From NCBI RefSeq assembly GCF_031769215.1, contig NW_026782047.1:1364001-1428000 (forward strand): 64,000 bases of DNA. The letters run 5' to 3'. A program made the position numbers and the translations under genes. The notes under the pieces are model-generated. The model was not told the DNA's origin and made no database searches. It saw nothing but the letters and a program-made list of their open reading frames with translations. Shown piece after piece: positions 27,441 through 64,000 of this stretch. Within the stretch, counting starts at the first letter, position 1. Each line of letters begins with the position of its first letter. The DNA comes from Ylistrum balloti (taxonomy: Eukaryota).

Positions 27441-28411
27441 GTAAAACATTTACCTTCCTTAGTTATATAAAAAAATATTTCAAAATACATCTAGCGATAA
27501 GATTGAGTTTGATAAATCACAGATATGAACCAGGACATGTCAATATTTAAGTCCGCAATGTGATTGTATTGTCCTTGTTGTATGGAAAAGACTTAAAAAT
27601 AAGTGATATCGATTTAGAAAAATCATGATAACGGGTACGTCACGATAATGGGTCTCCAACCAGTAGTTGATGTTTAGGTAATTAAAAATTAATGCATGAA
27701 ATAATAAATGAGAATAATATCAAATAGTCCGCCATGTTGCTTTTGTATCCACCATTGGAGCAAAGGAAGACTGGAACTGTCAATTTCCATGTCATGAAAG
27801 CAGGACTTAGATCCAAATCTGAGCTGATAGTACATGTAAGTGCGAGACCTCTCAAACTACACTCTCTTTGTAGTCTTTTGTATCTAATCTATTGAAAGAT
27901 ACAAAGAAAGTAAAAATTATCTTTGTGCATCAACCTCTTCGTGAAAATGGTGATATTGGGAAACCTAAAATAGTACGTTTGGATCAGCTACACAAATTGC
28001 CTATGACTAGGACAAAGAGAGGGATAATAAGCTCCATGTAATGCTATTTTTTAAGAAACGTGTACCTGCTAAAATTTGAATCTATGACAAGCCATGATTT
28101 GTTCATTGAACCGAAAATATTGAACCAATGCATGACAAAATTGAATTAGATAAAGACATCTAATTTTGTTACATGTTACCTTTTTGTCATGATATATCTT
28201 ATATTTTTATGAAACATATTCATGATATTTAGTATTAGATATCTAAGATCGATTTATGAAGGAAGTTTCTTTTGGACAAGTTTTAATTTACATATGGTTA
28301 TTAGATCATGTGATGTTCCTAACATGGTGAACGCCATTAAAACACAAGAAATTAGCATCTTTCAATAAAAACTGAGAATAGATACAGTAGAGCCAAGCAC
28401 TGAAGAAAACT

Positions 28412-28455
28412 GCTTCATACAACTGTTTCATCCTTCTAGCTCTCGTCAGTGATGG
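28412..28455 (-). ncRNA. Degenerate hammerhead motif (same repeat family)
   Basis: CCATCA CTGACGA GAGC TAGAA GGAT GAAA CAGTTG TA TGAAGC; core boxes kept, stems eroded; flanks homologous to the 62717-62885 copy. Confidence 0.62.
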
Positions 28456-28555
28456 TAAAGATTTTAAAACCTAAGGATCCTCACGTTATCTAGATGGGGA
28501 GGTGCACTTGCCCCATATAGCAATAGATTTCGTAATTTTTCTTTATTGGATCACT

Positions 28556-41400: not shown

Positions 41401-42176
41401 TAACGCATTTTAGTATACAGAAGTGTAAATGTGGAAAAACAAAATGTTCCCGTAGAAGATACTTTTGTTCAAATTTGGTTAACAACTCTTTACAGTGCTT
41501 CATATTCCATATAACATTAATTGCACTTTCGAGTATTTAAAAAGACTATAGTACGAACAGTGGTAGTAAGACGCCATGAAACGCTATTAAAATGGGTTTT
41601 TGTGAACTTTAGAAATCCAATCTTAAAGAAAATGGTCCGGGTCCTTAGCATTTACTAATGTAACTGGGAATTTCTTATCGATTAAGCATAGTTATCTTTT
41701 TTCGTATGCTTACGGTCAATATCAAATATAATATAGATACTTTATAGATTTTAGTATTTATTAATTGTAGTTATTGAATAAAGTCCATTGAATATCTTCA
41801 TTACCTAGAACACTTCTTCTACCCTACTATATCACAAATTACACGTCCACTTTTTTTTTGTATCTAAGACACGAGCTAGTCCTACAATTCACAAACAAAA
41901 AGGATATCAACAATTTACTTTATTCCGTATAAAAAGTAATCTTTTTATAATCCTATATCTATTATTCATAATTTGTAACTTTCAGCCTAGCTCAGCTATA
42001 TCATTACCAATAAATATGATACAGTTGTGCAGTTCTGTTATTTTATTCCTTTTTAAATCAACATGTAATTAAAGTAGAATACTTGTCGAGATAATGCGAT
42101 ATACTGCATCATTACACGAATCTACATATATGTACATATGTCATTAGATACAGCAAGGCCAAATACAAGTTTAACT

Positions 42177-42219
42177 GCATCACCAACTGTTTCGAACTTA
42201 TAGGATTCGTCAGTGATGA
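42177..42219 (-). ncRNA. Degenerate hammerhead motif (same repeat family)
   Basis: TCATCA CTGACGA ATCC TATAA GTTC GAAA CAGTTG G TGATGC; core boxes kept, stem II and cleavage site eroded. Confidence 0.58.
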
Positions 42220-44834
42220 TAAAGGTCTACATTTTGAAACGAAGGACTGAGGAAAATTTTAGTGATCGAACGAAATGCAAAAAATCTAAAATGGGGAGGC
42301 GCATTGCTGGTTGTTATGGTAAACAAATAACTAATGCAGAGTGATAATGGAAATCAGACTGGTCCCAATGTAAATAATGATAAACTAAAAGTTGAACGTA
42401 CCTAAAACTGCATGCAAATAGACGATAAACAGCAATGCAAAGTAATTGTCGGAGAAAATAAAAACAAACAAGACAAATATTATATCAAACCCTTTATTGA
42501 ATAACTTGTTCCACTTGTTTGAATTACAAATAAGTATCAGTTATTTACATAATATGTATACACCAAGAAAGCAGATCCCAATATTCGCATGTCTCTATCG
42601 AGAAAGCAGACAATATTCTGCGTTCTCGCGTTACAGGTTTCACTTAATGTCTGTCAATTAAAGTACCACTCTTAAAATCTTGGTATATTTACATAAATAT
42701 TGTTTCGATGTTCACGTATCTGTAGTCCATGCACTACATTATATCTGGAACAGCCAACGTCATTTAATTACTTATCTCAATGCTTTCACCTTTCATAAGT
42801 CGAATGTGTAATTAATTCGAAATTACAGTTTGGTTATTCGTGTTTATAAAGGAAAATGAAACATAAATACAATATATACAGTATATCGTATATCGGGATT
42901 TTTTGTGCGTTCCTAATCTTTACGAATTTAGCGACCTTTTCAAAATAACAAAAAATCAAGATAACAAAATTTGCATTTTTTTTTAAAAAACACGAGTAAT
43001 ACATCTATAGAGTTGCTGTACCTACATGCACCTGAATACTTTGTAGTCGTGACCACTTCTACGATAGATAAATACTAGTTGGTAGGTAAACTTCATATCT
43101 AGTATGACTAGTCAATACGATCTCCAGTTGATGTTGGATCTACTCTGATCAAAGTCTTCAAGAGACGCATTCCAAATTTCTGAGGCGATGGAATCGAAAG
43201 AAAAGAAAATAAGCAAAATTTGAAAAAAGACATATTTTTGGAATTTTCGCAAAAATATCCCGATATACTATATATGCGTTGTTATAGTCGAAGTTTTGCA
43301 ATTTCTTGTTATAAGTCCTACATATCTCCATTGATATGATAATATAGTAACTGACCTAAAGCTGTAATCAGTACGTTTCCTAGACTGATGGTTTTAATGT
43401 AAAGAGTAGAGACAAGTTATTTATGTTATTTACTCATCAGTTTTTGTCTTTAACTTTTTTACGGTCTTAAATTGATTCAAATTGCCATTTAAAATTAATC
43501 TAGATTTAAAACAAAAGTTTCGTGTCGTATTCTAATTGTGTTATATTAGGGTTTTTAGCGCTGATTTACATTCCAATTCTCCGTCTCTCAGGATCTATAA
43601 GACAGCTGTTTGATATGTAAGTAAGACGTAATGGACGATTTGTTTTTATATACCTACCATATGGTACAACATTGCTTCAAATGTCTTGGATGAAAACTTC
43701 CCGAATATAGGAATATAGGACGTTGTTTAAAGTTCATAAATCATAACAAAGAAAATTTTAGCCTGTGCTATTAGGATGACTAGTGTGAGGCGCTCTCTAT
43801 TGTGTAATGAATTATGTATCTTGATTTATCATTGAAATTATCACGTTAACTTGGTTTCATTTACTAAATTTTAAAAGTGTCAGTCCTGACTATTCCCTCC
43901 TGTCTATATATAACTTTGCAAAACTGTATCATCATGATGACTCAGCCTATTATTCTACTTCTATGTAGATGTCTCTATTCAGGACATTCCTTGTCAAACT
44001 TAGTTACATATTTATCTGTTAATTTTTGTATGTGCGATCTCGTTTCGTCAAGAACTAAACTGCTTTTTCAATGTGCTTAATTCGGGAATCTTTTGAAAAG
44101 CTCTCGGTGAAGGATAGTTGCTGAAAGGAACATATGAAGTAATACTGATATCTATACTTATATAGGTGGTAAATGATCTTGTATTGTTGTTCCAGTAGAA
44201 ACTTGATTTGATTTCATGAGGGGATTCTATTTCATTCACGGTGTACATTTCCTGTTTGAGATAAGAAAACAAAAATATGATACATTGCAGGAAGTATGTT
44301 TATCTACATAATTCCACCCAAAACCGTAATGAAAACCCAAAACAAGAAGAAAAAACGACCAATCAAAGCTACGTATACAAGATTGTCTACAGTATACAGG
44401 TAATCAAAGCAATATATATACAAAGTGTTAGAGCTGTCTAGTAAACTCCCTTGCATTTACAGGTAAGTAACCTTATTCGACTAAAAACTGAGAAGCCAAT
44501 AAATTGACCAGACTGTCAATTGATCTACCTGCTAACAAACAAATTTCATGTACACCACGCGACCTGTTCATGTACACCACATAGTCTGATCATGTACACC
44601 ACATAGCCTGTTCACTGGTCATGCTATAAGACAGATGGCCTGTTAAACTGACTGCATGTGCTGTAAAATGACCATCATATGAGCCGATAAGGTTTTCAGT
44701 CGAGTGAAAAATGACACCCTGTGAATGATGGTACTGTGAGCCAAGTAGCCTGTAACGTGGTCAGAATGGGTATCATGTCCAGTCGAAAACTGACCAACCT
44801 TCATAGTGAACTGACCAGCCTTTATTTCTATTTC

Positions 44835-50017: not shown

Positions 50018-53000
50018 TCAGTGACCCTTAATATCCCCGAGTTCGTCGTCAGGTGGGACCAGGATTGAAAGCGTCACAGCAAACAAGAGGATAAGGAAAC
50101 AAACCAGCAATGTCCGATCTATTACTAGCGCCACCTGCTGCCACTCCAATTTTATGAAATCTTTTCGATCTTGGTCCGCTAAACGCATTTCGTTCCTTTC
50201 AATTGTCCAATTCACTTTTTGTAGTACCCGCACAAACTGTCGTTCACAATATTCACTGTTTGCGACGTTCAAGCGTCTGGTGAATCGTGGGGAAACACCA
50301 CCATTTTCAGAAGGAACTTCTGTTTCGAATTTGTCAAATTTGTAGTATTCTCCTTGTGGAACTTTTTCCTGGAAAGAAATCAAGACAGTGTTATTTTGTT
50401 ACCTGTAGTCATTGAAAATATATCAACAAACCATAAATGGCCGATCTATACAATCTTTAGAGACATATAAAATTATAACGCAGATTTAATCCTTCTCATA
50501 TCTAAAAGATATACACATATAACTTGTCATCATACCGTCCGCACTGATCAATCATCAAATTCGTATTATTGACAAGAGATCCCGTAGGGAGACAACCATT
50601 ATTTAGTCTTTATTTGTCACCGTTTTTGTCCCTGTTCTTTCCTCAATTTTTGTGCTTGTAAATATACGAAAGTTGAAAAAATATTTTTTTTGAAATAACG
50701 ATAATGATCACAGACGCCTCCTCAGCTTTAGGCCTAAAGCATCACTAACGAGTCCTACGAGGCTAATTGATAAGTTGTGAACGTCATATTTAAGAGTTTG
50801 ACCTTTGCCGAACATATTGCATTGTTTTTAAACACAATCCCCTTCAGTGTCTTTACACTTTTCATCCATAGTTGCAAACCTCTTCAGAAACTGACCAGGT
50901 TCTGCTTCTAAAAGGTTAAGCTTAACACGCAACAAAGTTCGCCTCGTTTGACGCTGATCAACTGTCGGAAATCTTGGTAACATACGGTATGAGAGATTTC
51001 TCATTGCAAGATCTTCTGTAAGATTAGAATGTACTATTTCCTGTAGTGGCTTTCACTCTGTAACTCGCCTGCCAGCAATAAAACTTCATGGACTTTATTG
51101 ATAATTTTTAGGGTTGCAACGGTGACAGTTTTCCCAGCATTCGCGTCATCCCCAAGGCTCTGCCTGTCATGTTTAAATTCCGCCATCCACCTTTTCAATG
51201 TAGCAATCATGTATGAAGGGGCAACATTCCTTAGTGTTGCTACCATATCAGTATGAATATCCTTAGGTGCTAGACCGTTCTTATACAAATATTGATTTAC
51301 TGCTCTTTCTGCGATTTTTTCCATTTTCCAAAAGTCAAAAGTCTTGTTGACTTTACGGTGCTACCTCTTCGACACAACCTGACCAAATGACTTTGGCTAC
51401 ATAGACTTAACTACTAAGTGGATAGTAGAGCTGAAAAAGGACATCCCTGCCTATCTTCTTCAATACAAGGCTCACTACTTATCAATCAGCCCTCATATAA
51501 GGACGAAGCAGCTCTGCTACCTATGCTAAATTGTGATTTAAAGGTGCGATTCTTTCGTGCAATCTTTAACTATAAATCCAAGATGGTCGCCTGACAGCCG
51601 TTGTGTTTTTCGGATCCGTTCCAAAACCAGAAACGAGCAACTAGGTACCAAGAGAAACCTACATACATGCATGAGGTTCCAATTTATGTAAAGTTTCCCA
51701 TAAAAGCCGCCTACACCTGTATTTCTTTCAAACTTTGCATGTTTATAGTACAATAGATGACGACAATATGACAAAAACATACACTTGAATTTTACTCTTT
51801 TAGATAAAAAAGGCCCAAAGGACCCACACGTTAATGAACTGACTACATGTCCAAACGTGCATTAGTTACATGTTTTTGTATCACCTTTTTCATAAATTCT
51901 GGTTTTGTTACCTTCCCAAATCATTATTCACCATTTATATATTGGTAATGGAAAACAATAACGATTAAAAAAAAAAACAATTTTCAAAACCAGGTTATCA
52001 CAAAATATATGAAATCTTATGAAATAAGTTTTGTCAACCATTTTTATCTATTTGATAATTAGTTCAATATGTGTTCTATCACCACGTAAATTTGAAACCA
52101 GCAAAATTGAAACTTCAATGAGGCAAACATTTTAAAAGAGGCAATGAACAGCATAATTGCGCCATTAGACATATTAGATCATTAAAAGTTGTAAACATAG
52201 TTAGAGACTGATGTACATTATAATCTTATAGTTGTTCTTTATTATTATTTTTTATCAAAATATTCATATTCGGTTTGCAGCATTTGAATACTATTTGCCC
52301 TGTCAATGACTAGACTTAAGTAATATTTGATTGCGAACACTGTCCTCACAGAACATGAGGAAAATCAGGCCGACACATCAACAAGTTCAGTATAACAATG
52401 CAGTGGCCCTCAATAAGCCAATTTCCTTCTCTTTGGCTTGCAATTCAATATCCAAGTTTTATCAGTAATTGTTAAATCAGGATTAAAATAACTATATTGC
52501 ACTTTGTTTAACAACATCGAAATGCATTTGAGAGCAAAATTATTATAATATGTCATAGTAACGTAATACATCATTATTTTGACGTCAGAGTAGTAGATTA
52601 TAAATGTATACTTTTTCATCAAAATGACTAAAAGAATGTTTGACTTCATTTATCTATCAATAACTATTTTTTGAATGCTAGAAAAATATATTCCCAAATT
52701 TAATATTTTTTTTGTGCACAGAGTATACATATAATTTGTTTTTGAAACGGAAAAAGCTATAACGTAAGTCTTTGATGACGTAGGCTTCAAACATGAGATA
52801 TCATGAATTGTAAAAATGTTCACTTTTTCATTCCTTAGGGGACAATGGGAAACGGGCGCATCAACTTTACGAGAGATCAATCCAATACTGTTCAAGAAAT
52901 AACAGCATGGTTTACAGACTACGGACATAAGGCGATTTGAATATCCGATCTTCAGTAAGCTAAAGAACATAATCACAGAGGGAATGACACAACAATATAA

Positions 53001-55967
53001 ACATTTTCAATTAGAAAATATTGTCTCTTAAATAAGTCACGTCAGGTTATCGACTAATTACTGTAAAAAGGGAAACATAGTAAAGTTTGTACCATTCCCG
53101 GCTCCGGTGGAGGTTCCGGTAGATCCAGCTTGATAAACAGGATCCGGGCAAAGACACCAAAGCAAACCTTCTTTAGTAACATGGGAACCTCAAACCCTCG
53201 GGAGCCTTTGTGGTGAATATTCAACGTGAATACATTCATCGCGGTGGCGAATGAGACAATTGCGATGGTGATGCCGTAATACAAACCTATAATAGAAAAA
53301 AAACATTGTTTTTATAAAGGGACTCGAATGGTAAGCTTTGTCCAATAAAAATGTAAATAACATTTAAAAGAAGTGATATATAGGTTAAAATAAAGCTGTG
53401 CTTCAAAACTTGAAAAGCAAGTGAAGAAAAAGATGGGTTTACTTTTCAAAATAGGAACATATGAATCCTTCCAAATGTCGAAGTATTATTTCAATTGATT
53501 AGATAACGATAATGAAAACAGTGGGACAATAATACATTGTACATATGTCATAACACGGAAATATGAAATGTGGATTTTGTTACCGTAACAGAATCTGTAA
53601 TAACTGATTTTGTATAACATTATGCATAGTGTATGATTTTTTTATTATACACACACAACTATACAAACATAAAAAGACAATTAGTGTTGAGAATGCTTTT
53701 GAAAAATACAGATTAATTGTTAATAAGACATGTGGGGTAGAAAACAATATCATTGATGTAAAATTAGGGAGATTTTTGTAGTGAATTGTTACCAATACAG
53801 GTATTTCAGTGAAACGATTCAAACAATTCGTTAATTGGATATAAGCTGACGTCTGGGAAAAGACTGACTGATGGTGTGTTACACAAGTCAAAGACCCATA
53901 GGAAAAAGGTTGTCATTTTATATAAAACAAAGACCAATAAGAAGTAAGTTTGAAAGTGTCATTTCTTACAAAACACAAACCTACCTGTAGCAGGTTGATA
54001 TTATCATGTTACACAAACCAAAGACCAATAAAGTTGAAAGTGTCATGTTATATAAAACACAGGCTCACCGGGGAAAAGGTTGATAATTTTAAGCAATATA
54101 AAACACGGGTTACATAGAAAAAACAGTGTTAGTGTCATGTTATAAAAACTTTAAGAATAGATGCTGTAGTGTTTACCAGGACATAAATCCACTAAGAAAC
54201 GGTACACGGTACCGTGTTGAAAAGACCCACTAGGGACACGTTTGTAAACGAGTGCGGCTTACTCTGGCATTGTTAGTTGTGTATTCAAGAAGTATTGCCA
54301 ATCGCTATCAACAACAACCATTTGCTATAGAGCTGAAAACAACAACTAGTACTAATAAGTATTCCGATTGAAAGTAATTGGAGTTATATTGGATTATCAC
54401 GTGATCTATGATAATCACGGTTATCACCAGCAAGGCTAAAAAATAACCGAGCGAAAAGAGGCTTATTCATCGAGGTGTCGTAAAACCAGGAAGTTGGAAA
54501 CAGCTCTAGGATACAGTATAATGCATTATCTCGCTATACTAAAACTCATTCTAAATTTGCTATACACTTGTGTGCATTTGTTTAAAGCGCATCACGTTTT
54601 TCGATACTGTAGCTTTTTACAAATTTAAAGGAAATAAAAATAATAATTTTGTGAGAATTATGGAATTATATGGAATTCCCATCCACTGATAACGCTTCTA
54701 GAACCACATCAAAACAAATATTGAGGTTCATAAAAAGGAAAGAAAAGAGACGACAGAGCACTTAATGCTGTCAAATAAAGGATCGATAAGAAATCCAAGA
54801 AACAGACAGGATGAAACAAACCTGTAAATAGGAATCGGTAAAAACAACAACAACAAAAAAACATGGGGTTAAAAAGGTCTCATGAAGCATGGATACATTA
54901 AATTAAACCATTTGAGAGCAAGGTCATGATACACATTGTTCTTAATTACGGCCAACACTAAAGTGTATGTGACAGTTTAACTCGGGAAGTTATAGTTATC
55001 TGGGTGATGCCTTTATATTTGCCACTGGGAAGGGCACATTTTCTACGTCATCAAAAACAAAGACGTGCGAGAGTCTTCGTGAATTTCTTTTTTTAATTTG
55101 GTACCAAAGAGCAAAGAACCTAAATTGCACAGAGAAGGGGAGTGGTGTTTTTTTTATCTATCACGAAACAGAGATAATACGTATTTACTAAGATGCACTG
55201 AAGTAATCTTAACAATTTATGAGCATTCAACATCGTTACCGTATATTCCATATTCACGTTTAAAAACAAAGAAAGAAATACGTTGGACATTGGCATTGAA
55301 TAATAATAAAAAAAAATACAAAGAAAAAGAGAAGAAGGGACGTTTTACAGCATGGCATTAAAATATAAGTACGGCATCTTTACCTTTTTACAAAACGAGA
55401 ATTGAACAGAACTTGTTAAGATGATGAGCACACGTAATCGCCACGCGCTATGGTATGTACGTGTTTTGATTATGCAAAATACTTGCCAACATTAACAGTA
55501 TGAAAAAGATCGAAGGTCAGGAATGAGCTGCATAGGCAATGAAAGAGTATTTAATTGTGGAAATAAGAACTGCATTAACGTAAATTCAGTTTAAAAAAAC
55601 AGGAATTTAGTAATATCGATCAAATTAGTTGAAAGGAAATCTAATTGTAGAATAAGAGTAATCGCGATTTGTAACACTTTCGAAATGAAGGCGATTTTGG
55701 ACCTGTCACTGGGGCAATTCCGTAAGCATTCAAACATGGCGGCAATACCGATCTACTTGAAGCTGTTTCGCGATTTTATTATCGTGCACTCTTCTTCTTC
55801 GTTTGAATGATTAAAATAAATTTCTTAATTTCGTTAGAAAAAATCATCTCTACTTCATCGTCTTACTTTAATGAGGTTATCCCTTATGATTATTGTTTTT
55901 TTGTTAAATGTTTTTCATTGAATATAATACATATAAAACAAAACACGTCTTCATCCTTTCCTACTTG

Positions 55968-56004
<37 letters not shown>

Positions 56005-59000
56005 TTTGTAAAAGTTTTTCTTATCTTAAACCCGTATTTCTCTGTTACAATCTGCACTTTGTGGGAGTTTACTGTTTTTAACTTCAATACGTGTCATGAA
56101 ATGGAAATAACTTGTTCACAGCTGTGGTAAGTCCTATTGGTTTGAGCAAGAAATCTCCTTTCCTGTTAAGTTGATCTACCTGACTAGTTTACAACTAGAC
56201 TTTGCCGCATATTTTTGTTGGTACATATATGTAAAAAGGCACATAAAGTCAACAACTACTTATCGAATGTCTTTCCTCTGTAACACATCACCTGAATATT
56301 TTCACCCGACTCACAAAAGAATGTGGGGGTTAACGTGACTCACGTATGAAGAGTATGATGTGACTTAAATATGAAGAGCACCACGTGACTTACCAGCAAG
56401 GGATACCATGTTACTTACCTATAATGGGTGCAACGTGACTTACCTATGAGGGGTACCACGTCTGACACAGGAGGCAGTCGTTCGGCCACGATCATTAAGA
56501 AGACTGTCATGGACAGCAACGTGGTAATCCCCATGGATATTTTCTCTCCTGAGTCCGAGGGCATATAGAAGCCAAGGAGAGCCACCAGAGTGATGAGTAT
56601 ACACGGCATCACCATGTTAAACAAGTAAAACAAAGGTCGTCTCTTCAGCACGATGTAATACTTCATGAAGTCATACGGGACGGGACAACACGAGAAGTTG
56701 ACGGGATGTAGGTTGTAACTAAATGTTATAAGCTCCCATTCAGAACTAGGTATGTAATTAGTTAGGTCCCCGTTCTCGCCCATTTTCACCATCTTTAGCT
56801 TCATATTATCGAACGTCCAAGAAGCAAATTCCATACTGCAATTCTGGACATCGAATGGAAAGTAACGCACATCCATAGAACAAGAACTCTTAAATATCCA
56901 CATGGACAACCACGTAACATTTCCGTCCGGAGTGACGATTACATTTGTGCTGACTGACGATAGCGAAGACCCTACATCTGCACTGAAATTCAAAGCATTA
57001 GTTATAAGTCGAGTTGTAAGACCTCAATGAAAACATAAGTTTAACAGTGTAAAGATATTTTACTTTGACAAATGTATACAGGTTTGTAGAGGCTGTTGAT
57101 AAGGTATGTTTAAGGTAAAGGACTGTCTGTGAAGTATATTCAGTGCAAAAGCAGCCATAAACACGGTCGTCTCGTAAAAAGACCTTTGGCCATTGGAGTT
57201 ATCGATACCTTCAGAAAATAAGCCTAGTCTAATGATAACGTCTGGCTTAAATTCTTAACTATCAATTATTGGGAAACATTTTCTAAATATTGATATGAAC
57301 GAAGCCCGACTAGCATCTGTTTACTACGAGGCACCTAGTTTCGGCAATATCGATAGAAATGGCAAGACCCTCAATTAAAAGTCTAGACACGTTAATGACA
57401 TCGGGTTTATAACATTTCAAAACTACCGAATAATTACACAAAAACATCATCTATTTCCAGAAATTCGAATAAATACCTTAGAAACAGACAACTTGTTCAA
57501 TAATAAATCTTCCAAGGTCATTTCTGTGCTAAACATTATAGTATGTACAACGTAACGTTTTGGCAAGTTATTTCAATAAAAATGAAATACCCATACATGT
57601 TAAAAATTAAAATTGAAAAAAAAAACCCCTGTCATTAGTTCAATGATACTATTATTCGAAGAATGCTTAAATCAAATTCTGCTAAAATATGTACGTTAAC
57701 AGTAGTCAGATATGGCTCCGCCAGCGAATTGAAAAAAATATCTGTGACAATATTCAAATTATAAATTTATGTATGTAAATAACCCTATAGTCCTATGATT
57801 CAGACAAACCGTAATCAGGAAGAAACCCAGTTTTAGACATGATCAAAATAATACTCCATCTGGATGAGTTCGTTAGTTAATGGTTGTTGTTATCAGAAAT
57901 CGTAGAAAGCTACAGCGATAGGTATAACCGTATTGGGTATAACAGCCACAATATAGATTCCAAATTGAATGAAGCATTGGTAATACGGCCTTCACGGGAT
58001 TCACTGTCGTGTTATACATCATTGCTTGATCTTGTTACCATCACTTGCTAAAGTTTGAATGACAGACAACCTATCAGAGTGGTTTTGAGGATCTGACAGC
58101 CACTGTGTTGTGGATGATATAGTGTACGTTCCCATTCATGTATACAATTGTTTTATAAATTATGTGATCTTTTAGGTTTCGCAATTGAAATAATATTCTC
58201 TGGTCATAACATTGCATTGTTTCGGAAATGAGGAACTGACTAACTGATGAATCTCTCCGAAGCGAAGTGATATACTGCTATCGATGTAATTTCATTTTCA
58301 ACGGTAATTTCAATAATGTAATTGAAATATTGTCCACCTATTCTTACAGATAATGTTTATGTTACAGTAGAGGCAACTAAATGATTCCATTTCAAACCAA
58401 TTTATATCTTTATGCTCCGAAAACAACATTAACAACCATTTAAGCCATGAACGCAATACGGCTGTTGTAGACAATTTGTTCTAAATGACGATTTCGTGGC
58501 TGATTTAAAACCTATTTTGGAATATTGCTTTTTGACATCAACAATTTCTATTAGAACCAAGAAGTCCAAATATGGAGAATTCAAAGATGTGTTTGTACAT
58601 GATTTTCCCCCTGTCTGCTGATTATGATAGACATCTCATGACTTCTACCAGAATGGTTTCGCACACTACATGGAATCAATAGCGTCAGGCACTTGACACA
58701 ACACACGTTGATACACTTTATCACTAAAACCACAGTCATCATAGGTTTTTACATTAACAAAAACACAAATCCGTAGATGCTTTTATTTAAGATCTGATAT
58801 AGTTTCTGTACTTTTTTCTTTTGGTTTTTGTCAACTGACGTTCAAATTCGTACCACAGGGTTTCAAAAGACCCAGGTTGATAAAAAATATGAAGAAATTC
58901 TACGAGTGATCTCATTTAAAACTATCCTATTTCTTGTGCGATAAGAAGATGGACGTATGTGGCAATCTTTTATTTGCCTGTTGGTTCGGTTGTTGTATAC

Positions 59001-59831
59001 CTTGTTCTCATTTTGAGAACGTTACATTATCTACTTGGATTTTCATATAAAGAAATTACTTTATTTGATAATAATATTTCATCCATTTCTTTTACTTTGT
59101 AAAGTTGTATTATTTTATCTATGTTATCACACCAACCTTAGCATCAGTATGTTGCTATAAATAACCATATATCATGAGATGTAGTGCACATTTAGAATCG
59201 ACTTATATTTCATCAGTAGCATAACAGTTGCTCAAAATGTAACTCTTTGTCTTGTTCAACAACTGTTTACAAAAAGGTACCAATAAATCACAAAACAGAA
59301 CCTATAATTCCATTAAAAAGCTATTATGTGAACATCATCAATTCAAATTCTATTAAACTAGGACAAAACATGAACAAAAGAAATATGTACACAGAGACTC
59401 CTGAACACGTAGTAGAAAAATAAGACCAGGTTTTTCGGAAAAGTATGCATCTTTTCTTCATCGACGACACGCGACATTTACAATCTATGTTAGCAATATC
59501 ACATTCTCAAATAAAAACAAGATATAAAACAACAATTTATAGAGTTTCAAAACTAAAGACAGAAAACTTACTTATTATACAATATTACATCGAGTTTCAA
59601 CAAGAAAGACAGAAAGCTCACTCACTGTATAATTATATACTGGTTTTTCTTACGTTAAGGCAGGAAATTGTACCTATCTAACAATAAAATCGGTTTTCCT
59701 CTGGAAGGGACTATAACTTACTTATTGTACAATAATATGTCGGGTTTCCAAACATCTGAATAAGGTATCCTGACAACGTCAATATTGTTATATTTCTTTG
59801 GGTCCCATTTCAGCATGTAATCGAGCCATCC
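50018..59831 (-). CDS. Nicotinic acetylcholine receptor alpha subunit, alpha7/alpha9-10-like Cys-loop channel; 5' exons not located in the window
   Basis: Exons 59831-59722 (110 nt; WLDYMLKWDP...VWKPDILLYN), 56982-56444 (Cys-loop SSCSMDVRYFPFDVQNC, loop B SWTFD, vicinal CC in FSCCPVPY, M1, M2 GEKISMGITTLLSMTVFLMIVAE), 53286-53093 (M3) and 50368-50018 (EWQQVALVIDR, M4, TGA). GT-AG junctions with consistent phases. Confidence 0.93.
50739..51514 (+). ncRNA. Hammerhead motif interrupted by the mariner element
   Basis: Left half GCATCA CTAACGA GTCC TA (50739-50757); right half TA TAA GGAC GAAG CAGCTC (51496-51514). Removing the element and one TA restores stem II GTCC-TATAA-GGAC. Confidence 0.7.
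50758..51495 (-). mobile_element. Internally deleted mariner element with both TIRs and TA target duplication
   Basis: TA at 50756-57 and 51496-97 flank inverted ends (cgaggctaattgataagttgtga ... tcactacttatcaatcagccctca). The minus-strand ORF 51324-51034 (MEKIAERAVNQYLYKNGLAPKDIHTDMVATL...TLKRWMAEFKHDRQSLGDD) is a mariner HTH N-terminus. Sequence then jumps from ...RFATMDE straight to the C-terminal KCKDTEGDCV-like motif, so most of the catalytic domain is missing. Confidence 0.9.
55968..56004. repeat. (CAT)12 microsatellite in nAChR intron
   Basis: Direct reading. Confidence 0.95.
56335..56459 (-). repeat. 25-bp degenerate tandem repeat (5 copies) spanning the nAChR exon donor
   Basis: gtgact(t/c)ac-like motif at 56335, 56360, 56385, 56410 and 56435; the unit is 16 nt of exon plus 9 nt of intron. 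Confidence 0.8.
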
Positions 59832-62746
59832 CTGCAATGAAAACAATTTTAAACATAAGTAAACAGTAAATAGGCGGTACCATATTTACGACTCGTTTGA
59901 GACTAGGCTACGTATGTGTGTGCAACTGTTATATACTTCTCACATGATAATTGCTCTTAATATAATGTGAAATTAAAATTTCGTAACGAATATACTTGAA
60001 GGTCAAACTATAGAAAAGCCTTTTATGGACGCTCTTCGTAAAACTCTTACTCCAACTAATATCCACTACCTTTACATAAAAACAACAATCATACATGCTT
60101 TCTGAAATACATCGCAATAACACTTAATTCGTCAGGCGTGCCTGTCAGCTATTCCGAGCGCACTTAAATATTTCCAAGAATACAAACATGGACATCTGTA
60201 CTCATAAAACACGTATTTTCCCAAACATTGATTTCCTGGGTGCGCTCTTGTGTTGTGCATTTCATGCCATTATGGCGACATTTTATACTCAAATAAATAT
60301 GACTTTTAGATTTGTTCGGGTTATCAATCTTGTTTTAAGTAGAGGAGCAATGAATACGAATAGTCATTCCAAACTTACGGAATCCATAATGATCCGGTTC
60401 CTTAATTTTTGCAAGAATCAATGGTAATGTTGACAAATGTGTGTTGCAGTTTTCCTGTATTGGGGGAAACAGTGGACGTAAAGATGTTTTAAAGTTAGGA
60501 AGGAACAGTGTAGTAATTTGTAAAGGAGTAATGGATAGAATTCAAGAAAAATAGAACAACTGATACAAGAGGTTCGGATATTATTCTTCAATGACGAGAA
60601 TCTCTAAAAATCCCTTCAAAATCAATTTATCCTAGAAACTTCCTAACCCTTTCAAAAAGCTGACCGTCCTGGATGTTATCATGATTACTCAACGAGATCA
60701 TCACCTTACTAAACAAAAACCTCAAAGGAAACTTTCTCTCTTCCCAACGTGACCCTCCGTGGGTGCTATCATGTTCCACAATTCAACCCTCGAATGCGAT
60801 CTTCCTTGAATTCTTACATTCTTCCAAGGTATGATGTTCCCTAAAAGCCACGCACGTGACTTATTTTATTGGCATTATTTACCATTTGAGTATTGCTAAA
60901 CTCTGCAAAAAGCCGTCTTATTTTCCACGAGTGTGATAGTGTATATTTAAGTAGGTTATAGAATACATTGTATTACTTCCATTATAAGAACTAATACACA
61001 AACAATTATATTTGTTATCATTGAAGCTATGCATTAAGTGACACTGAATCACACCGTTGTATGGTTTACTACCCGTGCGCTTTAAGCAAGTAATATGTTT
61101 CCCTTAGAGCATACTCTATTCAATATACATCTTCAAGTAAGCGGTAATGGGTTACATAGAGCTCGTTAATATGTTCCAATGTATAACGAATGAATGCATT
61201 GGTTGTGATGTATTGCGAAGCTTTGTATTCTACAATAGTAATGATGGAGATGCTGTATGAGAGCTGTATATTTATCATTAAGCAGCATCTTCGAAGGCGT
61301 CAGATATGTAAAGGACATTCGACTTCTATCAAAGTACATACTCAGAGACTCTAAATAACACATAGCTTATACCATTTGATTAGACCAACATCATTCACAA
61401 GTTAATTTCCAACAACACCATACCGATGTCATTGTTCACTATTATATCCTGATATGCAGAAAACACAAATGGAATCTCCAATATTGCACTCAAAGTTTTC
61501 GGTCATGTTTTATTTGAAATAAAATTGCAGCATAAGAAAATCTGGGCACCAGCTTCATCGCTTTACCGATGTATCCTCTCTCCCTTTGATTTCCAAAACA
61601 CGAATCTACTTATAGATATCTTCATAACAGCAATAAAACGAAGAAAGACAAAAATAAGCGTAATAAAAACCAGCAGTTAAAACCAGAATAGTGAGTCTAG
61701 CATACGTCGCAAAGGCACCATAAAGACTTGGGAACCTTTAGGTGACACAACCAACTCTATCCAGACATAGTGATCTTTCGAGAGTATCAAACTTTTAATT
61801 GTTGAAATAAAAATCAAAAACCTTGAATGTTATTTACGAGAACGATTATCAAGATCGTCACTGTACTTTCATGATATTCTGATAGATATCTCCGACTATG
61901 CCATTAATCAGGTAACGAGAGATACTGATCCAAAACTTTTCATTCAAAGTATTTCCATCAATAACAAAATTGACATGTAAACTCTGTCCATATGACAGAC
62001 TGCCATACTATATTCGAACAATGAGCAGTGATGATGACAGAGCCCTCAGTCTTCAGCAGATATATAACTCCGTGGATGGTAAACAGTTTGTCGGCTGCCA
62101 GGGTACGTTATAAGCCTGTATAAGACATCTGTATTCTTATGAGTAGTGACACTGGTTTAGAATACACTCTTGAACGTTTTCTTTTTCTCTTCTGTCATTA
62201 TCTGATATCCTACTTTTTCAACTTGACATAATGTAATTGTTTAGATTGTGACGTGGATTGTGACGCCTGTTTCAGTACTTAACACAAGCACAAGCTTTTT
62301 TTTCTGTACATCCATAATTTTGGTCCGCACATTACTGAAGATTTGAAGTAAGATGAAACAGCACCATCCTCATATTGCCAATTGCTTTATCAGGCTATTC
62401 TATATTAATATATCAATTCAAACATAAAATGCCATATATATTTAGCATTGTGTTATTTGTACAACCCTCTTCAACTGGTATATTATGGCATTGTAACATT
62501 ATTATTTTACTTTTTTTATGGGATTCCAATAAATTTCATCAACATCAATTATATCACTATTTAATTTCACAGGAAATTTCTCGACTTCCAGTTTCAAAAT
62601 GCTCCATTTACTTGTGTCATACAGATAATACATGCTACTTTTTAAATTAGGCTTATTATGCAAGATTGTACAAAACACATAAACGAATAACAACTTTCAA
62701 TAAAAAATAAGAAAAGATACAGAAGAGCCAAACAATGAATTAGAAT

Positions 62747-62790
62747 ACATCATACAGCTGTTTCGTCCTTCTAGAACTCGTCAGTGATGC
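62747..62790 (-). ncRNA. Minimal type I hammerhead ribozyme motif, core intact
   Basis: Minus strand reads GCATCA CTGACGA GTTC TAGAA GGAC GAAA CAGCTG TA TGATGT: stem I GCAUCA/UGAUGU, core CUGANGA, stem II GUUC/GGAC, GAAA, short palindromic stem III (ACAGCUGU), GUA cleavage triplet. Confidence 0.8.
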
Positions 62791-64000
62791 TAAAGGCCTA
62801 AATTTTAAACCTTAGAGGCGACTGAGGGAAATCCTAAGTTATCGAAAAAAAAGTCAAAATCTAGATGGGAAGGTGTACGATCCCCATTAATCACTAACTT
62901 TCATAATTTCCATACAATTATATGTCTGATAATGTTTCAATATGTATCCTCTTCTTGATAGTAGTAATAAATTTAGATACGATTTCTCTGTTTGTGGTTA
63001 CAGATTTCATGCTTTAAATTTTGCATGTTTGATAAACTTGATAAATATCAGATAACATAACATGTATCGTCTAATTGCTATTGTAAATTTCTTTCCCACT
63101 TAACACGAGTAGGTTGTCAATTTGTCAATGTATTTATTGAATGCTCAATTTTCTTGCTATGGAAAGTTTTAAGAACCATTTTATGACCATTTATTCTTTT
63201 TGAGAAAACCGTTGAAAAGCAAAAGAACAAAACATTACTTTTCCAATTTTCAAGAATCATGACATGATTTGACTCATTGTTACATCTATATATTGATAAC
63301 ATAAAGAGAAATTCTTTATTGTCATCATTTCCTCTTTGGTTTCCATGCTGCGATCTTTGTCAAGAATCGTCATGGTAACATATAATGTAACCGTTTGTGT
63401 GGTTGGTTCATTTGGTGTTAGTATTGACCAATCAAATGCTACATAAAGTGACGTTTCACTGTACCAGTTTAAATCAATTAAAATCATTAACTTAATTAAA
63501 ATCCACTGAGCATTACTGAGAAATACTTGCAACGAATTCATATTTGGTGGACGGAAAGAATGATTGATATCATGACTGGAATGCAGCATTATGTGTTATC
63601 TATTTGGTGCATGCTGACAAATTCCCTGATATTGTGACTAATTGCACCGTTTTTCACCACATCTTCATACATCACGCGGCACCAGCCGATTGTCGTATTT
63701 ACCGTATGATAAAGCTATCTGTTTTCTACACGTATGTATAAAGACACTAAGCAATTGGGGAGGAGACTGGAGAAGCCCAGTCATATGGATGAGAGAACTT
63801 TGTAGTTATCGTGGCAAATACTACATTATTTAGCAATAATATGAAAAATGTAGTGACTATATTGATAAAGAAGACCGCAGTGCTATTAATTAATGCAGAA
63901 CAGACAGAAAGAGAAAGACACGACGACTATAACTTCTATTTTCATCACATTAAATGGTTTTGTAGTACAGTAATACTTTCAGATCGGTGTTTTGGCAATT

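What the first reader, a model, noticed from the sequence alone, without database searches (positions are those of the whole stretch)
62717..62885. Intact minimal hammerhead ribozyme in an nAChR intron region, part of a five-copy dispersed repeat
Seen: the minus strand at 62790-62747 carries every element of a type I hammerhead: 6-bp stem I, CUGACGA, 4-bp stem II with a 5-nt loop, GAAA, palindromic ACAGCUGU stem III and a GUA site. The surrounding ~130-170 bp recurs at about 28380, 38340, 42150 and 50710. Established: minimal type I hammerheads with a short palindromic stem III occur in Penelope-like element terminal repeats and in non-autonomous retrozymes, and can cleave as dimers. Inference: this is a non-autonomous ribozyme-bearing retroelement family present at about 1 copy per 13 kb here. 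This copy is on the nAChR sense strand, upstream of the exons found, so it could cut the pre-mRNA if the intron spans it.
Basis: partly seen in the sequence, partly recalled or inferred. Interest (0 to 1): 0.8.

Follow-up and report, generated by a model that had tools for sequence, protein, structure and literature searches.

The report
Hammerhead-ribozyme retroelement copy in nAChR intron
A complete self-cutting hammerhead RNA motif really sits on the sense strand of an acetylcholine-receptor intron, but it is one shortened copy of a roughly 400-base mobile element present thousands of times in this bivalve genome, and nothing shows that it cuts the gene's RNA.

Summary
The minus strand at 62790-62747 has every hammerhead core base, a 6-bp helix I, a 4-bp helix II, a 2-bp helix III with a palindromic loop, and a GUA site. 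Rfam Hammerhead_1 matches end to end at 29.4 bits, below the 34-bit cut-off.

It lies in a 254-bp, 5'-shortened copy (62916-62663) of a non-coding unit of about 400 nt. Copies share one 3' end and have scattered 5' ends. Copies that reach the head run on into the tail of a preceding unit. That is the insertion style of Penelope-like elements and animal non-LTR retrozymes. The ribozyme core occurs 6,648 times in the genome, often as 45-bp arrays.

Exon-by-exon homology places the copy in sense orientation inside a 5.6-kb intron of an nAChR alpha-like gene.

Function is not shown:
- No RNA data were available.
- The lone motif is predicted to misfold and to need a partner copy.
- An inverted decayed copy 400 nt downstream could mask it.
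- Stems across copies show neutral decay, not covariation.

The most likely reading is a passenger insertion and a new member of a known kind. Earlier notes of this scan already describe this family's arrays and other sense-intron copies elsewhere in the same genome.

The parts
62747..62790 (-). Complete type I hammerhead motif with helix I of 6 bp, helix II of 4 bp and helix III of 2 bp plus a palindromic tetraloop. The predicted cut follows GUA, between 62753 and 62752.
   Evidence: Sequence read. RF00163 gives 29.4 bits over the full model. Core and stems were scored.
62663..62916 (-). 5'-truncated copy (254 of about 400 nt) of the dispersed non-coding element. It carries the hammerhead 91 nt from the element's 3' end, which reads ...TTTTGTACAATCTT.
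   Evidence: Family profile positions 77-331, E 1e-70. Alignment to 29 genomic copies. The copy is also present in contigs of another individual.
62314..62466 (+). Weak, decayed copy of the same element in inverted orientation, tail to tail with the main copy. Its broken ribozyme region is 76% complementary to the intact one.
   Evidence: nhmmer E 0.011. Inverted repeat arms 62330-62362/62757-62789 and 62448-62464/62666-62682. The two are paired in the 531-nt fold.
38293..38463 (-). Family copy with a broken core (CCGACAA in place of CUGACGA).
28342..28559 (-). Family copy with a damaged helix II and C11.1 changed to U.
42143..42303 (-). Family copy with damaged helix II, helix III and cleavage site.
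50711..50762 (+). 5' half of a family copy, broken inside loop 2 by an insertion of about 760 bp.
   Evidence: profile positions 169-227, and the sequence print.
51520..51559 (+). 3' continuation of the split copy (profile match 278-314). The rest of the ribozyme starts a little upstream and the element tail runs a little downstream of this range.
   Evidence: profile positions 278-314, and the sequence print.
54468..54580 (+). A further 5'-truncated family copy, antisense to the receptor gene, in the next intron.
   Evidence: nhmmer E 1.6e-10.
59721..59831 (-). nAChR exon encoding GWLDYMLKWDP...WKPDILLYN. It is the first exon downstream of the ribozyme.
   Evidence: Paralog HMM positions 92-128, E 4e-12.
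56442..56984 (-). nAChR exon holding the Cys-loop, the vicinal CC of alpha-type subunits, and TM1-TM2.
   Evidence: ORF. Pfam PF02931 positions 91-216 on this place. Paralog HMM positions 128-304, E 3e-48.
53162..53296 (-). nAChR exon encoding TM3.
   Evidence: ORF. Paralog HMM positions 301-345, E 0.027.

Best explanation
The motif is the ribozyme of a retroelement, not a device of the receptor gene. The family unit is about 400 nt, AT-rich and non-coding, with one classical metazoan type I hammerhead 91 nt from its 3' end. I infer that new copies are made by target-primed reverse transcription. Synthesis starts at a fixed site (...ACAATCTT) on an RNA that is multimeric or circular. That would explain why copies share the 3' end, stop at scattered 5' positions, and, when they reach the head, continue into the tail of a preceding unit. 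This is the pattern of Penelope-like elements and of the animal non-LTR retrozymes thought to depend on them. The window copy is a 254-bp, 5'-shortened insertion that landed in sense orientation in the 5.6-kb intron between the DEKNQ exon and the WxDxxLxW exon of an nAChR alpha-like gene. Its ribozyme still has every required base. With a 2-bp helix III it belongs to the class that cleaves well only when two copies pair through the palindromic loop. There is no second intact copy nearby. I therefore expect it to cut the pre-mRNA slowly or not at all, and to be a neutral passenger.

Shown: the motif, family membership, copy anatomy, copy number, strand, and position between homology-defined exons.

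Inferred: the RNA-mediated copying mechanism, dependence on a Penelope-like enzyme, weak activity, and neutrality.
For: Motif. A family-typical copy (L022) reaches the Rfam cut-off at 34.1 bits, and genome hits go up to 41.6 bits.

Abundance: 3,942 first-look candidates for the 241-nt query. The core pattern occurs 6,648 times against 0 for the reversed control.

Anatomy:
- 30 copies share the 3' end, with 5' starts from 1 to 246.
- All 7 copies that reach the head continue 5 to about 230 nt into a preceding tail.
- At least 38 loci hold a contiguous tail-head junction, built as a partial unit plus a full unit.
- The unit is 401 nt, 37.7% GC, with no open segment over 53 aa.
- It has no tRNA, 5S or 7SL head.

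Penelope-like elements with their own, different hammerheads just 3' of the GIY-YIG domain exist in this genome.

Gene context.

Weak lone activity: the monomer's lowest-energy fold is -9.3 kcal/mol against -3.5 for the hammerhead fold, while the dimer's lowest-energy fold, -24.7, is a double hammerhead with an 8-bp helix III. The motif is masked by the inverted copy in the longer fold.

Neutral decay: only 10 of 30 and 22 of 51 dispersed copies keep an intact ribozyme or core, and broken pairs outnumber compensated ones. For helix II pair 3 the counts are 3331 C-G, 213 U.G, 130 C.A and 14 U-A, against 8.3 doubles expected.

Literature: short palindromic helix III and dimer dependence (PMC4209133, PMC7229834); partial tandems and 'tail' in Penelope-like elements (PMC8557442, PMC11167929); retrozymes as derivatives of these elements, with 44% of Xenopus tropicalis copies overlapping introns (doi 10.64898/2026.07.22.740005).
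Against: - No autonomous partner was found. None of 30 GIY-YIG loci carries this ribozyme or this tail as an integral part.
- No target-site duplications were detectable.
- No long arrays of the whole 400-nt unit were seen, unlike textbook retrozymes.
- In this copy the ribozyme differs from the family majority at 2 of 44 positions against 42 of 211 elsewhere (p 0.014). Both changes keep pairing as G.U, which could hint at constraint. However, several other copies show the same contrast, and the helix II change is shared with other copies, so conservation among source lineages explains it.
- Energy models ignore tertiary contacts and protein help, so real activity could be higher.
- No RNA data of any kind were available.
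Confidence: 0.75

Rival explanations
1. The intronic ribozyme has been co-opted. It cleaves the nascent nAChR pre-mRNA in competition with splicing and so tunes receptor output, as proposed for conserved intronic hammerheads of amniotes.
For: Sense orientation inside a 5.6-kb intron. All catalytic bases are intact. Divergence is lower in the ribozyme than in the rest of the copy, and both changes preserve pairing.
Against: The same low ribozyme divergence is seen in unrelated copies. About a third of sampled copies are intact anyway. The monomer is predicted to misfold and to be masked by an inverted copy. Unchecked notes of this scan list many other sense-intron copies in this genome, which argues that they are tolerated rather than selected. 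There is no expression or orthologue evidence.
Confidence: 0.07
2. It is a fragment of an autonomous Penelope-like element's terminal repeat (a solo pseudo-LTR), not a member of a separate non-autonomous family.
For: 5' truncation, partial tandems and a short 'tail' before full copies are hallmarks of Penelope-like elements (PMC8557442, PMC11167929). Neighbouring family copies lie in the same orientation as the endonuclease gene in 4 of 4 such loci.
Against: None of 30 copies extends beyond the 400-nt unit into coding sequence. None of 30 GIY-YIG loci has this ribozyme. In the one Penelope-like family whose 3' end I aligned (11 copies), homology ends about 100 nt after that family's own, different hammerhead, and in the Penelope-like loci that hold a copy of this family the distance from the endonuclease to that copy varies from about 450 to 1,150 nt. 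The helix proportions (I 6 bp, II 4 bp) are those of classical satellite or retrozyme hammerheads, not of the minimal Penelope type with helix II of 7-8 bp (PMC4209133).
Confidence: 0.1
3. The repeat spreads at the DNA level, as a satellite, a miniature inverted-repeat element or Helitron cargo, and the ribozyme is an inert hitch-hiker.
For: The 45-bp and 81-85-bp internal arrays are DNA-level expansions (scan notes). No target-site duplications were found.
Against: A fixed 3' end with graded 5' truncation is the signature of reverse transcription from the 3' end. No Pol III-type head was found, and I saw no terminal inverted repeats or Helitron-type ends when reading the head and tail sequences, though I ran no dedicated test. 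The ribozyme columns are less diverged than the rest of the unit (8.2% against 15.9%), as expected if source copies need the ribozyme.
Confidence: 0.05

Closest known systems
Animal non-LTR retrozymes (Cervera and de la Pena 2020, PMC7229834; Li, Clavereau and Pollet 2026 preprint, doi 10.64898/2026.07.22.740005)
   Same: Non-coding, AT-rich unit of a few hundred nt with one type I hammerhead. Helix I is 6 bp, helix II is 4 bp and helix III is a weak palindromic stem that favours dimeric cleavage. There are thousands of copies, including monomers scattered in introns. Such elements were reported in a mollusc (mussel). A link to Penelope-like elements has been proposed.
   Different: In my sample the family occurs as single or 1.1- to 1.6-unit insertions with a fixed 3' end, not as long head-to-tail arrays of the whole unit. 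Instead, the 45-nt ribozyme alone is expanded into arrays. Circular RNAs were not tested. This exact ribozyme sequence was not found in the searched literature.
Penelope-like element pseudo-LTRs with minimal hammerheads (Cervera and de la Pena 2014, PMC4209133; Craig et al. 2021, PMC8557442; Frangieh et al. 2024, PMC11167929)
   Same: 5' truncation, a partial tandem ahead of a full copy, a short 'tail', a ribozyme near the 3' end, and a palindromic helix III.
   Different: No reverse-transcriptase/GIY-YIG open reading frame is attached. The genome's own Penelope-like elements carry other hammerhead sequences. Helix lengths are of the classical type, not the minimal type.
Newt satellite 2 and Schistosoma Sm-alpha type I hammerheads (as summarised in PMC4209133 and PMC7229834; Rfam RF00163)
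   Same: Same core, a helix II with the same GUCC/GGAC stem as the Rfam consensus, a very short helix III with a palindromic loop, and residence in repetitive DNA.
   Different: Different flanking element and host phylum. The loop nucleotides for the helix I/II tertiary contact are not evident here.
Conserved intronic hammerheads of amniotes (Rfam HH9 and HH10)
   Same: Sense-strand hammerhead inside an intron of a protein-coding gene.
   Different: Those are single-copy and deeply conserved, with stable helices. This one is one decaying copy among thousands, and no conservation data exist. I recall this comparison from general knowledge and did not test it here.

Membership tests
Hammerhead ribozyme, type I (Rfam RF00163) | Conserved core C3-U4-G5-A6-N7-G8-A9, G12-A13-A14, the A15.1-U16.1 pair, and H17 at the cleavage site | tested here: met
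   CUGACGA, GAAA, an A-U pair and GUA are all present.
Hammerhead ribozyme, type I (Rfam RF00163) | Three helices around the core, with helix I open and the G10.1-C11.1 pair present | tested here: met
   Helix I 6/6, helix II 4/4 with one G.U, helix III 2 bp. The Rfam alignment covers model positions 1-45.
Hammerhead ribozyme, type I (Rfam RF00163) | Score at or above the curated gathering threshold of 34 bits | tested here: not met
   The window copy scores 29.4 bits. A family-typical copy scores 34.1, and other genomic copies reach 41.6.
Hammerhead ribozyme, type I (Rfam RF00163) | Self-cleavage at the predicted site | not testable with these tools
   The only public run found holds DNA contigs.
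Hammerhead ribozyme, type I (Rfam RF00163) | Covariation supporting the helices | tested here: not met
   Within the family, 2 double-sided changes against 59 broken cells in 51 dispersed copies. Helix II pair 3 doubles: 14 observed, 8.3 expected. Other hammerhead families in the same genome keep the architecture with quite different helices.
Animal non-LTR retrozyme | Non-coding unit of about 150-450 nt with a type I hammerhead, low GC, and no LTR, primer-binding site or polypurine tract | tested here: met
   401 nt, 37.7% GC, longest open segment 53 aa. One hammerhead per unit. LTR, primer-binding-site and polypurine-tract motifs were not searched for specifically.
Animal non-LTR retrozyme | Head-to-tail tandem repeats of the whole unit (dimers to multimers), so that two ribozymes can release a monomer | tested here: inconclusive
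   Tail-head junctions are common (at least 38 loci). In 12 loci they are a partial unit plus one full unit, and only some of those give two ribozymes about 400 nt apart (L008/L075, L082). No arrays of two or more full units were seen.
Animal non-LTR retrozyme | Expressed as linear and circular RNAs of unit length | not testable with these tools
   No RNA run was found.
Penelope-like element (autonomous) or its pseudo-LTR | Adjacent open reading frame with reverse transcriptase and GIY-YIG endonuclease | tested here: not met
   No extension beyond the unit in 30 copies. 30 GIY-YIG loci lack this unit as an integral part.
Penelope-like element (autonomous) or its pseudo-LTR | 5' truncation, partial tandem before a full copy, and an optional 30-40-bp tail | tested here: met
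   L022 has only about 30 nt of tail ahead of the head.
SINE (Pol III-transcribed short interspersed element) | Head derived from tRNA, 5S or 7SL RNA with an internal promoter | tested here: not met
   ARAGORN finds none in six full-length copies. Rfam finds only the hammerhead.

The most novel reading that the evidence does not exclude
Lone sense-strand copies such as this one may be activated in trans. Abundant transcripts of the family, especially of the 45-nt arrays, could pair with them through the 8-nt palindromic helix III to form double hammerheads. The element family would then act as a genome-wide, dose-dependent cutter of host pre-mRNAs that carry sense-intronic copies, this nAChR gene among them.
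Probability: 0.05. Interest if true: 0.7.

Novelty: new member of a known kind. Interest (0 to 1): 0.25.

Why it matters
This copy alone matters little. Hammerhead-bearing retroelements are known across animals, a mussel among them, and intronic monomers are common. The family is still a convenient natural data set. It offers thousands of copies of one classical dimer-dependent hammerhead, in single, partial-tandem and 45-nt-array forms, many of them on the sense strand of introns according to scan notes. That could be used to ask whether such ribozymes ever cut host pre-mRNAs. It could also be used to test the recent proposal that animal retrozymes are copied by Penelope-like enzymes, because here the fixed 3' start site and the run-on into a preceding unit are clearly visible.

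Tried and rejected
- **Chance motif:** rejected by the Rfam alignment, pattern statistics and copy number.
- **tRNA-, 5S- or 7SL-derived SINE:** no such head.
- **Integral part of a Penelope-like element:** not seen in 30 GIY-YIG loci. The profile hits there are separate neighbouring insertions.
- **Target-site duplications:** longest shared flank words average 5.1 nt against 5.1... corrected value 4.8 nt in the control, so there is no signal. The 5' boundaries are imprecise.
- **Covariation by genome-wide counts of helix II variants:** no excess of compensated doubles. A stricter version limited to dispersed context had only 33 exact wild-type matches and was underpowered.
- **Patterns over 35 places with ambiguity codes:** One fold request was too long and was split.
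- **RNA evidence:** the only run found (X1) holds DNA contigs from another individual (about 1% differences). It confirms that the copy is present but says nothing on expression or cleavage.
- **Tail-anchored, unbiased census of 5' ends:** I did not try to obtain them another way.
- **Spliced protein model:** I did not build or search a joined model of the receptor. Exons were matched piece by piece against a profile of intronless paralogs.
- **Organism:** earlier scan notes call the genome a scallop. I did not verify this.
Full report
**1. The observation**

The minus strand from 62790 to 62747 reads as follows:
- helix I 5' strand GCAUCA
- core CUGACGA
- helix II GUUC/GGAC closed by UAGAA
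- GAAA
- the palindrome ACAGCUGU, which forms A15.1-U16.1 and C15.2-G16.2 around the loop AGCU
- A17
- helix I 3' strand UGAUGU

Every invariant core position is present. Helix I pairs 6/6 and helix II 4/4, each with one G.U. The predicted cut lies between 62753 and 62752.

Rfam's Hammerhead_1 model aligns over all 45 positions at 29.4 bits, E 1.8e-5 for the 301 nt searched. This is under the curated 34 bits, so the whole-window gathering scan is empty. A loose core pattern occurs six times in the window against 0.76 expected.

A family profile raises the count in the window to seven copies or fragments.

**2. The element that carries it**

*Abundance.* A 241-nt query around the motif gave 3,942 first-look candidates in the 648-Mb assembly. 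The 40 that were scored were 78-86% identical. The ribozyme core with its palindrome occurs 6,648 times, against 0 for the reversed control. RF00163 itself finds copies up to 41.6 bits.

*Copy structure.* Aligning 30 copies with flanks shows a sharp common 3' end (...TTTTGTACAATCTT) and 5' starts scattered from position 1 to 246. The window copy is 254 bp, 62916-62663, and so is 5'-shortened.

The unit is about 401 nt and 37.7% GC, with no open segment above 53 aa. It has no tRNA-like head and no Rfam match other than the hammerhead. The ribozyme's cut site lies 91 nt from the 3' end.

*Run-on into a preceding unit.* All seven copies that reach the head of the unit continue upstream into the tail of a preceding unit, by 5 to about 230 nt. 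A query spanning tail and head found at least 38 loci with the contiguous junction. In twelve of them the layout is a partial unit followed directly by a full unit.

A fixed start with graded 5' loss and run-on into a preceding unit implies reverse transcription from one site on a multimeric or circular RNA. This is the description given for Penelope-like elements: 5' truncation, partial tandems forming pseudo-LTRs, and an optional 30-40-bp 'tail' (PMC8557442, PMC11167929). It also fits the proposal that animal non-LTR retrozymes derive from them (doi 10.64898/2026.07.22.740005).

*Internal arrays.* Inside some copies the 45-nt ribozyme alone, or an 81-85-bp piece, is expanded into arrays. Earlier notes of this scan already describe these arrays.

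**3. Link to an autonomous element**

Thirty loci with a GIY-YIG domain were fetched. Several carry their own hammerheads just downstream of the endonuclease. These share the core and a palindromic helix III but have quite different helices. That shows Penelope-like elements with ribozymes live in this genome. It also shows that the hammerhead architecture is kept across unrelated helix sequences.

None of these loci carries this family's ribozyme or tail as an integral part. The four profile hits are separate insertions at variable distance, though all lie in the same orientation as the endonuclease gene. The partner enzyme is therefore inferred, not identified. Target-site duplications were not detectable.

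**4. Gene context**

The open reading frames on the minus strand at 56415-56993 and 53054-53284 encode the Cys-loop, a vicinal CC, TM1-TM2 and TM3 of a nicotinic receptor subunit.

The genome has at least 150 ligand-binding-domain matches, most in uninterrupted frames of 400-500 aa. I built a profile from twelve of those intronless paralogs and searched stop-to-stop pieces of the minus strand one by one. The pieces line up without gaps. The coordinates below count on from the window into locus L031.

| Profile positions | Coordinates | Note |
|---|---|---|
| 30-76 | 67749-67615 | beyond the window end |
| 77-91 | 65480-65436 | DEKNQIITTNCWLNL; beyond the window end; weak alone at E 0.08, but contiguous with its neighbours in the profile |
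| 92-128 | 59831-59721 | |
| 128-304 | 56984-56442 | |
| 301-345 | 53296-53162 | |

The ribozyme therefore lies in sense orientation in a 5.6-kb intron. This rests on homology, not on transcripts.

**5. Would it cut?**

This is the classical metazoan design: helix I of 6 bp, helix II of 4 bp, and helix III of 1-2 bp with a palindromic loop. The literature describes this design as poor in single form and active when two copies pair (PMC4209133, PMC7229834).

Folding agrees with that:
- The 44-mer's lowest-energy fold (-9.3 kcal/mol) extends helix I over C3-U4-G5. The hammerhead fold costs -3.5.
- Two copies together fold at -24.7 into a double hammerhead with an 8-bp helix III and free cores.
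- No second intact copy lies nearby.
- A decayed inverted copy at 62314-62466 is 76% complementary to the ribozyme. It pairs with the ribozyme in the lowest-energy and centroid folds of 531 nt of context.

These are energy predictions with unremarkable z-scores. They ignore tertiary contacts, co-transcriptional order and proteins.

No RNA run was available. The one run found holds DNA contigs from another individual with about 1% differences. Those contigs enter the copy from both sides, so the insertion is shared.

**6. Selection**

Among 30 sampled copies, 10 keep an intact ribozyme. Among 51 dispersed copies in all fetched DNA, 22 keep the core. Stem changes there are mostly one-sided wobble changes (39 cells) or breaks (59), with 2 double-sided changes.

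Genome-wide counts for helix II pair 3 are C-G 3,331, U.G 213, C.A 130 and U-A 14, the last in seven loci. The product of the single changes predicts 8.3 doubles. So there is no covariation inside the family. Copies decay neutrally, with frequent loss at the two CpG sites.

The ribozyme columns are nevertheless less diverged from the majority than the rest of the unit, 8.2% against 15.9%. In the window copy the figures are 2/44 against 42/211, p 0.014. Many copies show this contrast, and the window copy's helix II change is shared with other copies. I therefore read it as constraint on the source lineages, not on this insertion. The sample was chosen by similarity to a query that contains the ribozyme, which may inflate the contrast.

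**7. Verdict**

The intron does span the copy. The idea that it trims the receptor pre-mRNA is possible but unsupported, and on present evidence unlikely.

The kind is known: non-LTR retrozymes and hammerheads linked to Penelope-like elements. Intronic monomers are common in other animals, at 44% of copies in Xenopus tropicalis. Notes of this scan already list this family's arrays and other sense-intron copies in the same genome. Those notes are unchecked, and I used them only as leads.

No paper in the searched library holds this ribozyme sequence. None links retrozymes to scallops.

Noticed in passing
L079, L081, L083, L084 (leading partial units); unit positions 304-308: In 4 of 10 independent tail-head loci the leading partial unit begins inside the helix III palindrome (AAACAGCTG, CAGCTG or AGCTG). 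That is 7-11 nt upstream of the ribozyme cut site and just 3' of helix II. It may be a reverse-transcriptase stop at the folded ribozyme or a transcript start. The sample is small and was truncated by the query design.
   Followed up: partly
L085:1440-1500: One copy has a clean internal deletion running from helix I (GCAT) straight to CAGCTG. It removes the whole catalytic core and helix II, and its breakpoint is at the same palindrome as the 5'-end hotspot.
   Followed up: no
window 50711-51559: A family copy is split inside loop 2 of its ribozyme by about 760 bp of foreign DNA, with TA at both junctions. This agrees with another first-reader note of a mariner-type insertion. The element tail resumes at about 51520.
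   Followed up: partly
window 62314-62466 (+): A decayed inverted copy lies tail to tail with the intact one, 196 bp apart. Together they make an imperfect long hairpin in the intron RNA.
   Followed up: partly
window about 28556-28630 (+): Next to the 28.4-kb family copy lies a tRNA-like stretch with good A-box and B-box matches on the plus strand. It is probably the head of a tRNA-derived SINE. ARAGORN does not call it.
   Followed up: partly
G000:C422:240415-261997 (L056-L059, L073): Five GIY-YIG matches spaced about 5.3 kb apart on one strand, four of them in open frames of 755 aa. This looks like a tandem array of apparently intact Penelope-like elements.
   Followed up: no
L048, L062, L064-L066, L069-L071: A Penelope-like family carries an unusual hammerhead-like motif about 120 nt past the endonuclease match. 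It has CUGAAGA, GAAA, a GCGC palindromic loop and a 5-bp helix I, but almost no helix II and no G10.1-C11.1 pair.
   Followed up: no
G000, many contigs: At least 150 matches to the nicotinic-receptor ligand-binding domain, most in uninterrupted frames of 400-500 aa and often clustered (for example C411, C316, C108, C345). The window's gene is one of the intron-bearing minority.
   Followed up: no
window 62687-62833 in run X1: 6,189 contigs of another individual's DNA run match the stretch laid (59600-63999) at 90% likeness or more, and nearly all of the summed depth falls in this bin. Many show 42-47-nt 'goes back' joints, which are 45-nt ribozyme arrays. The arrays may be under-represented in the assembly.
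   Followed up: no
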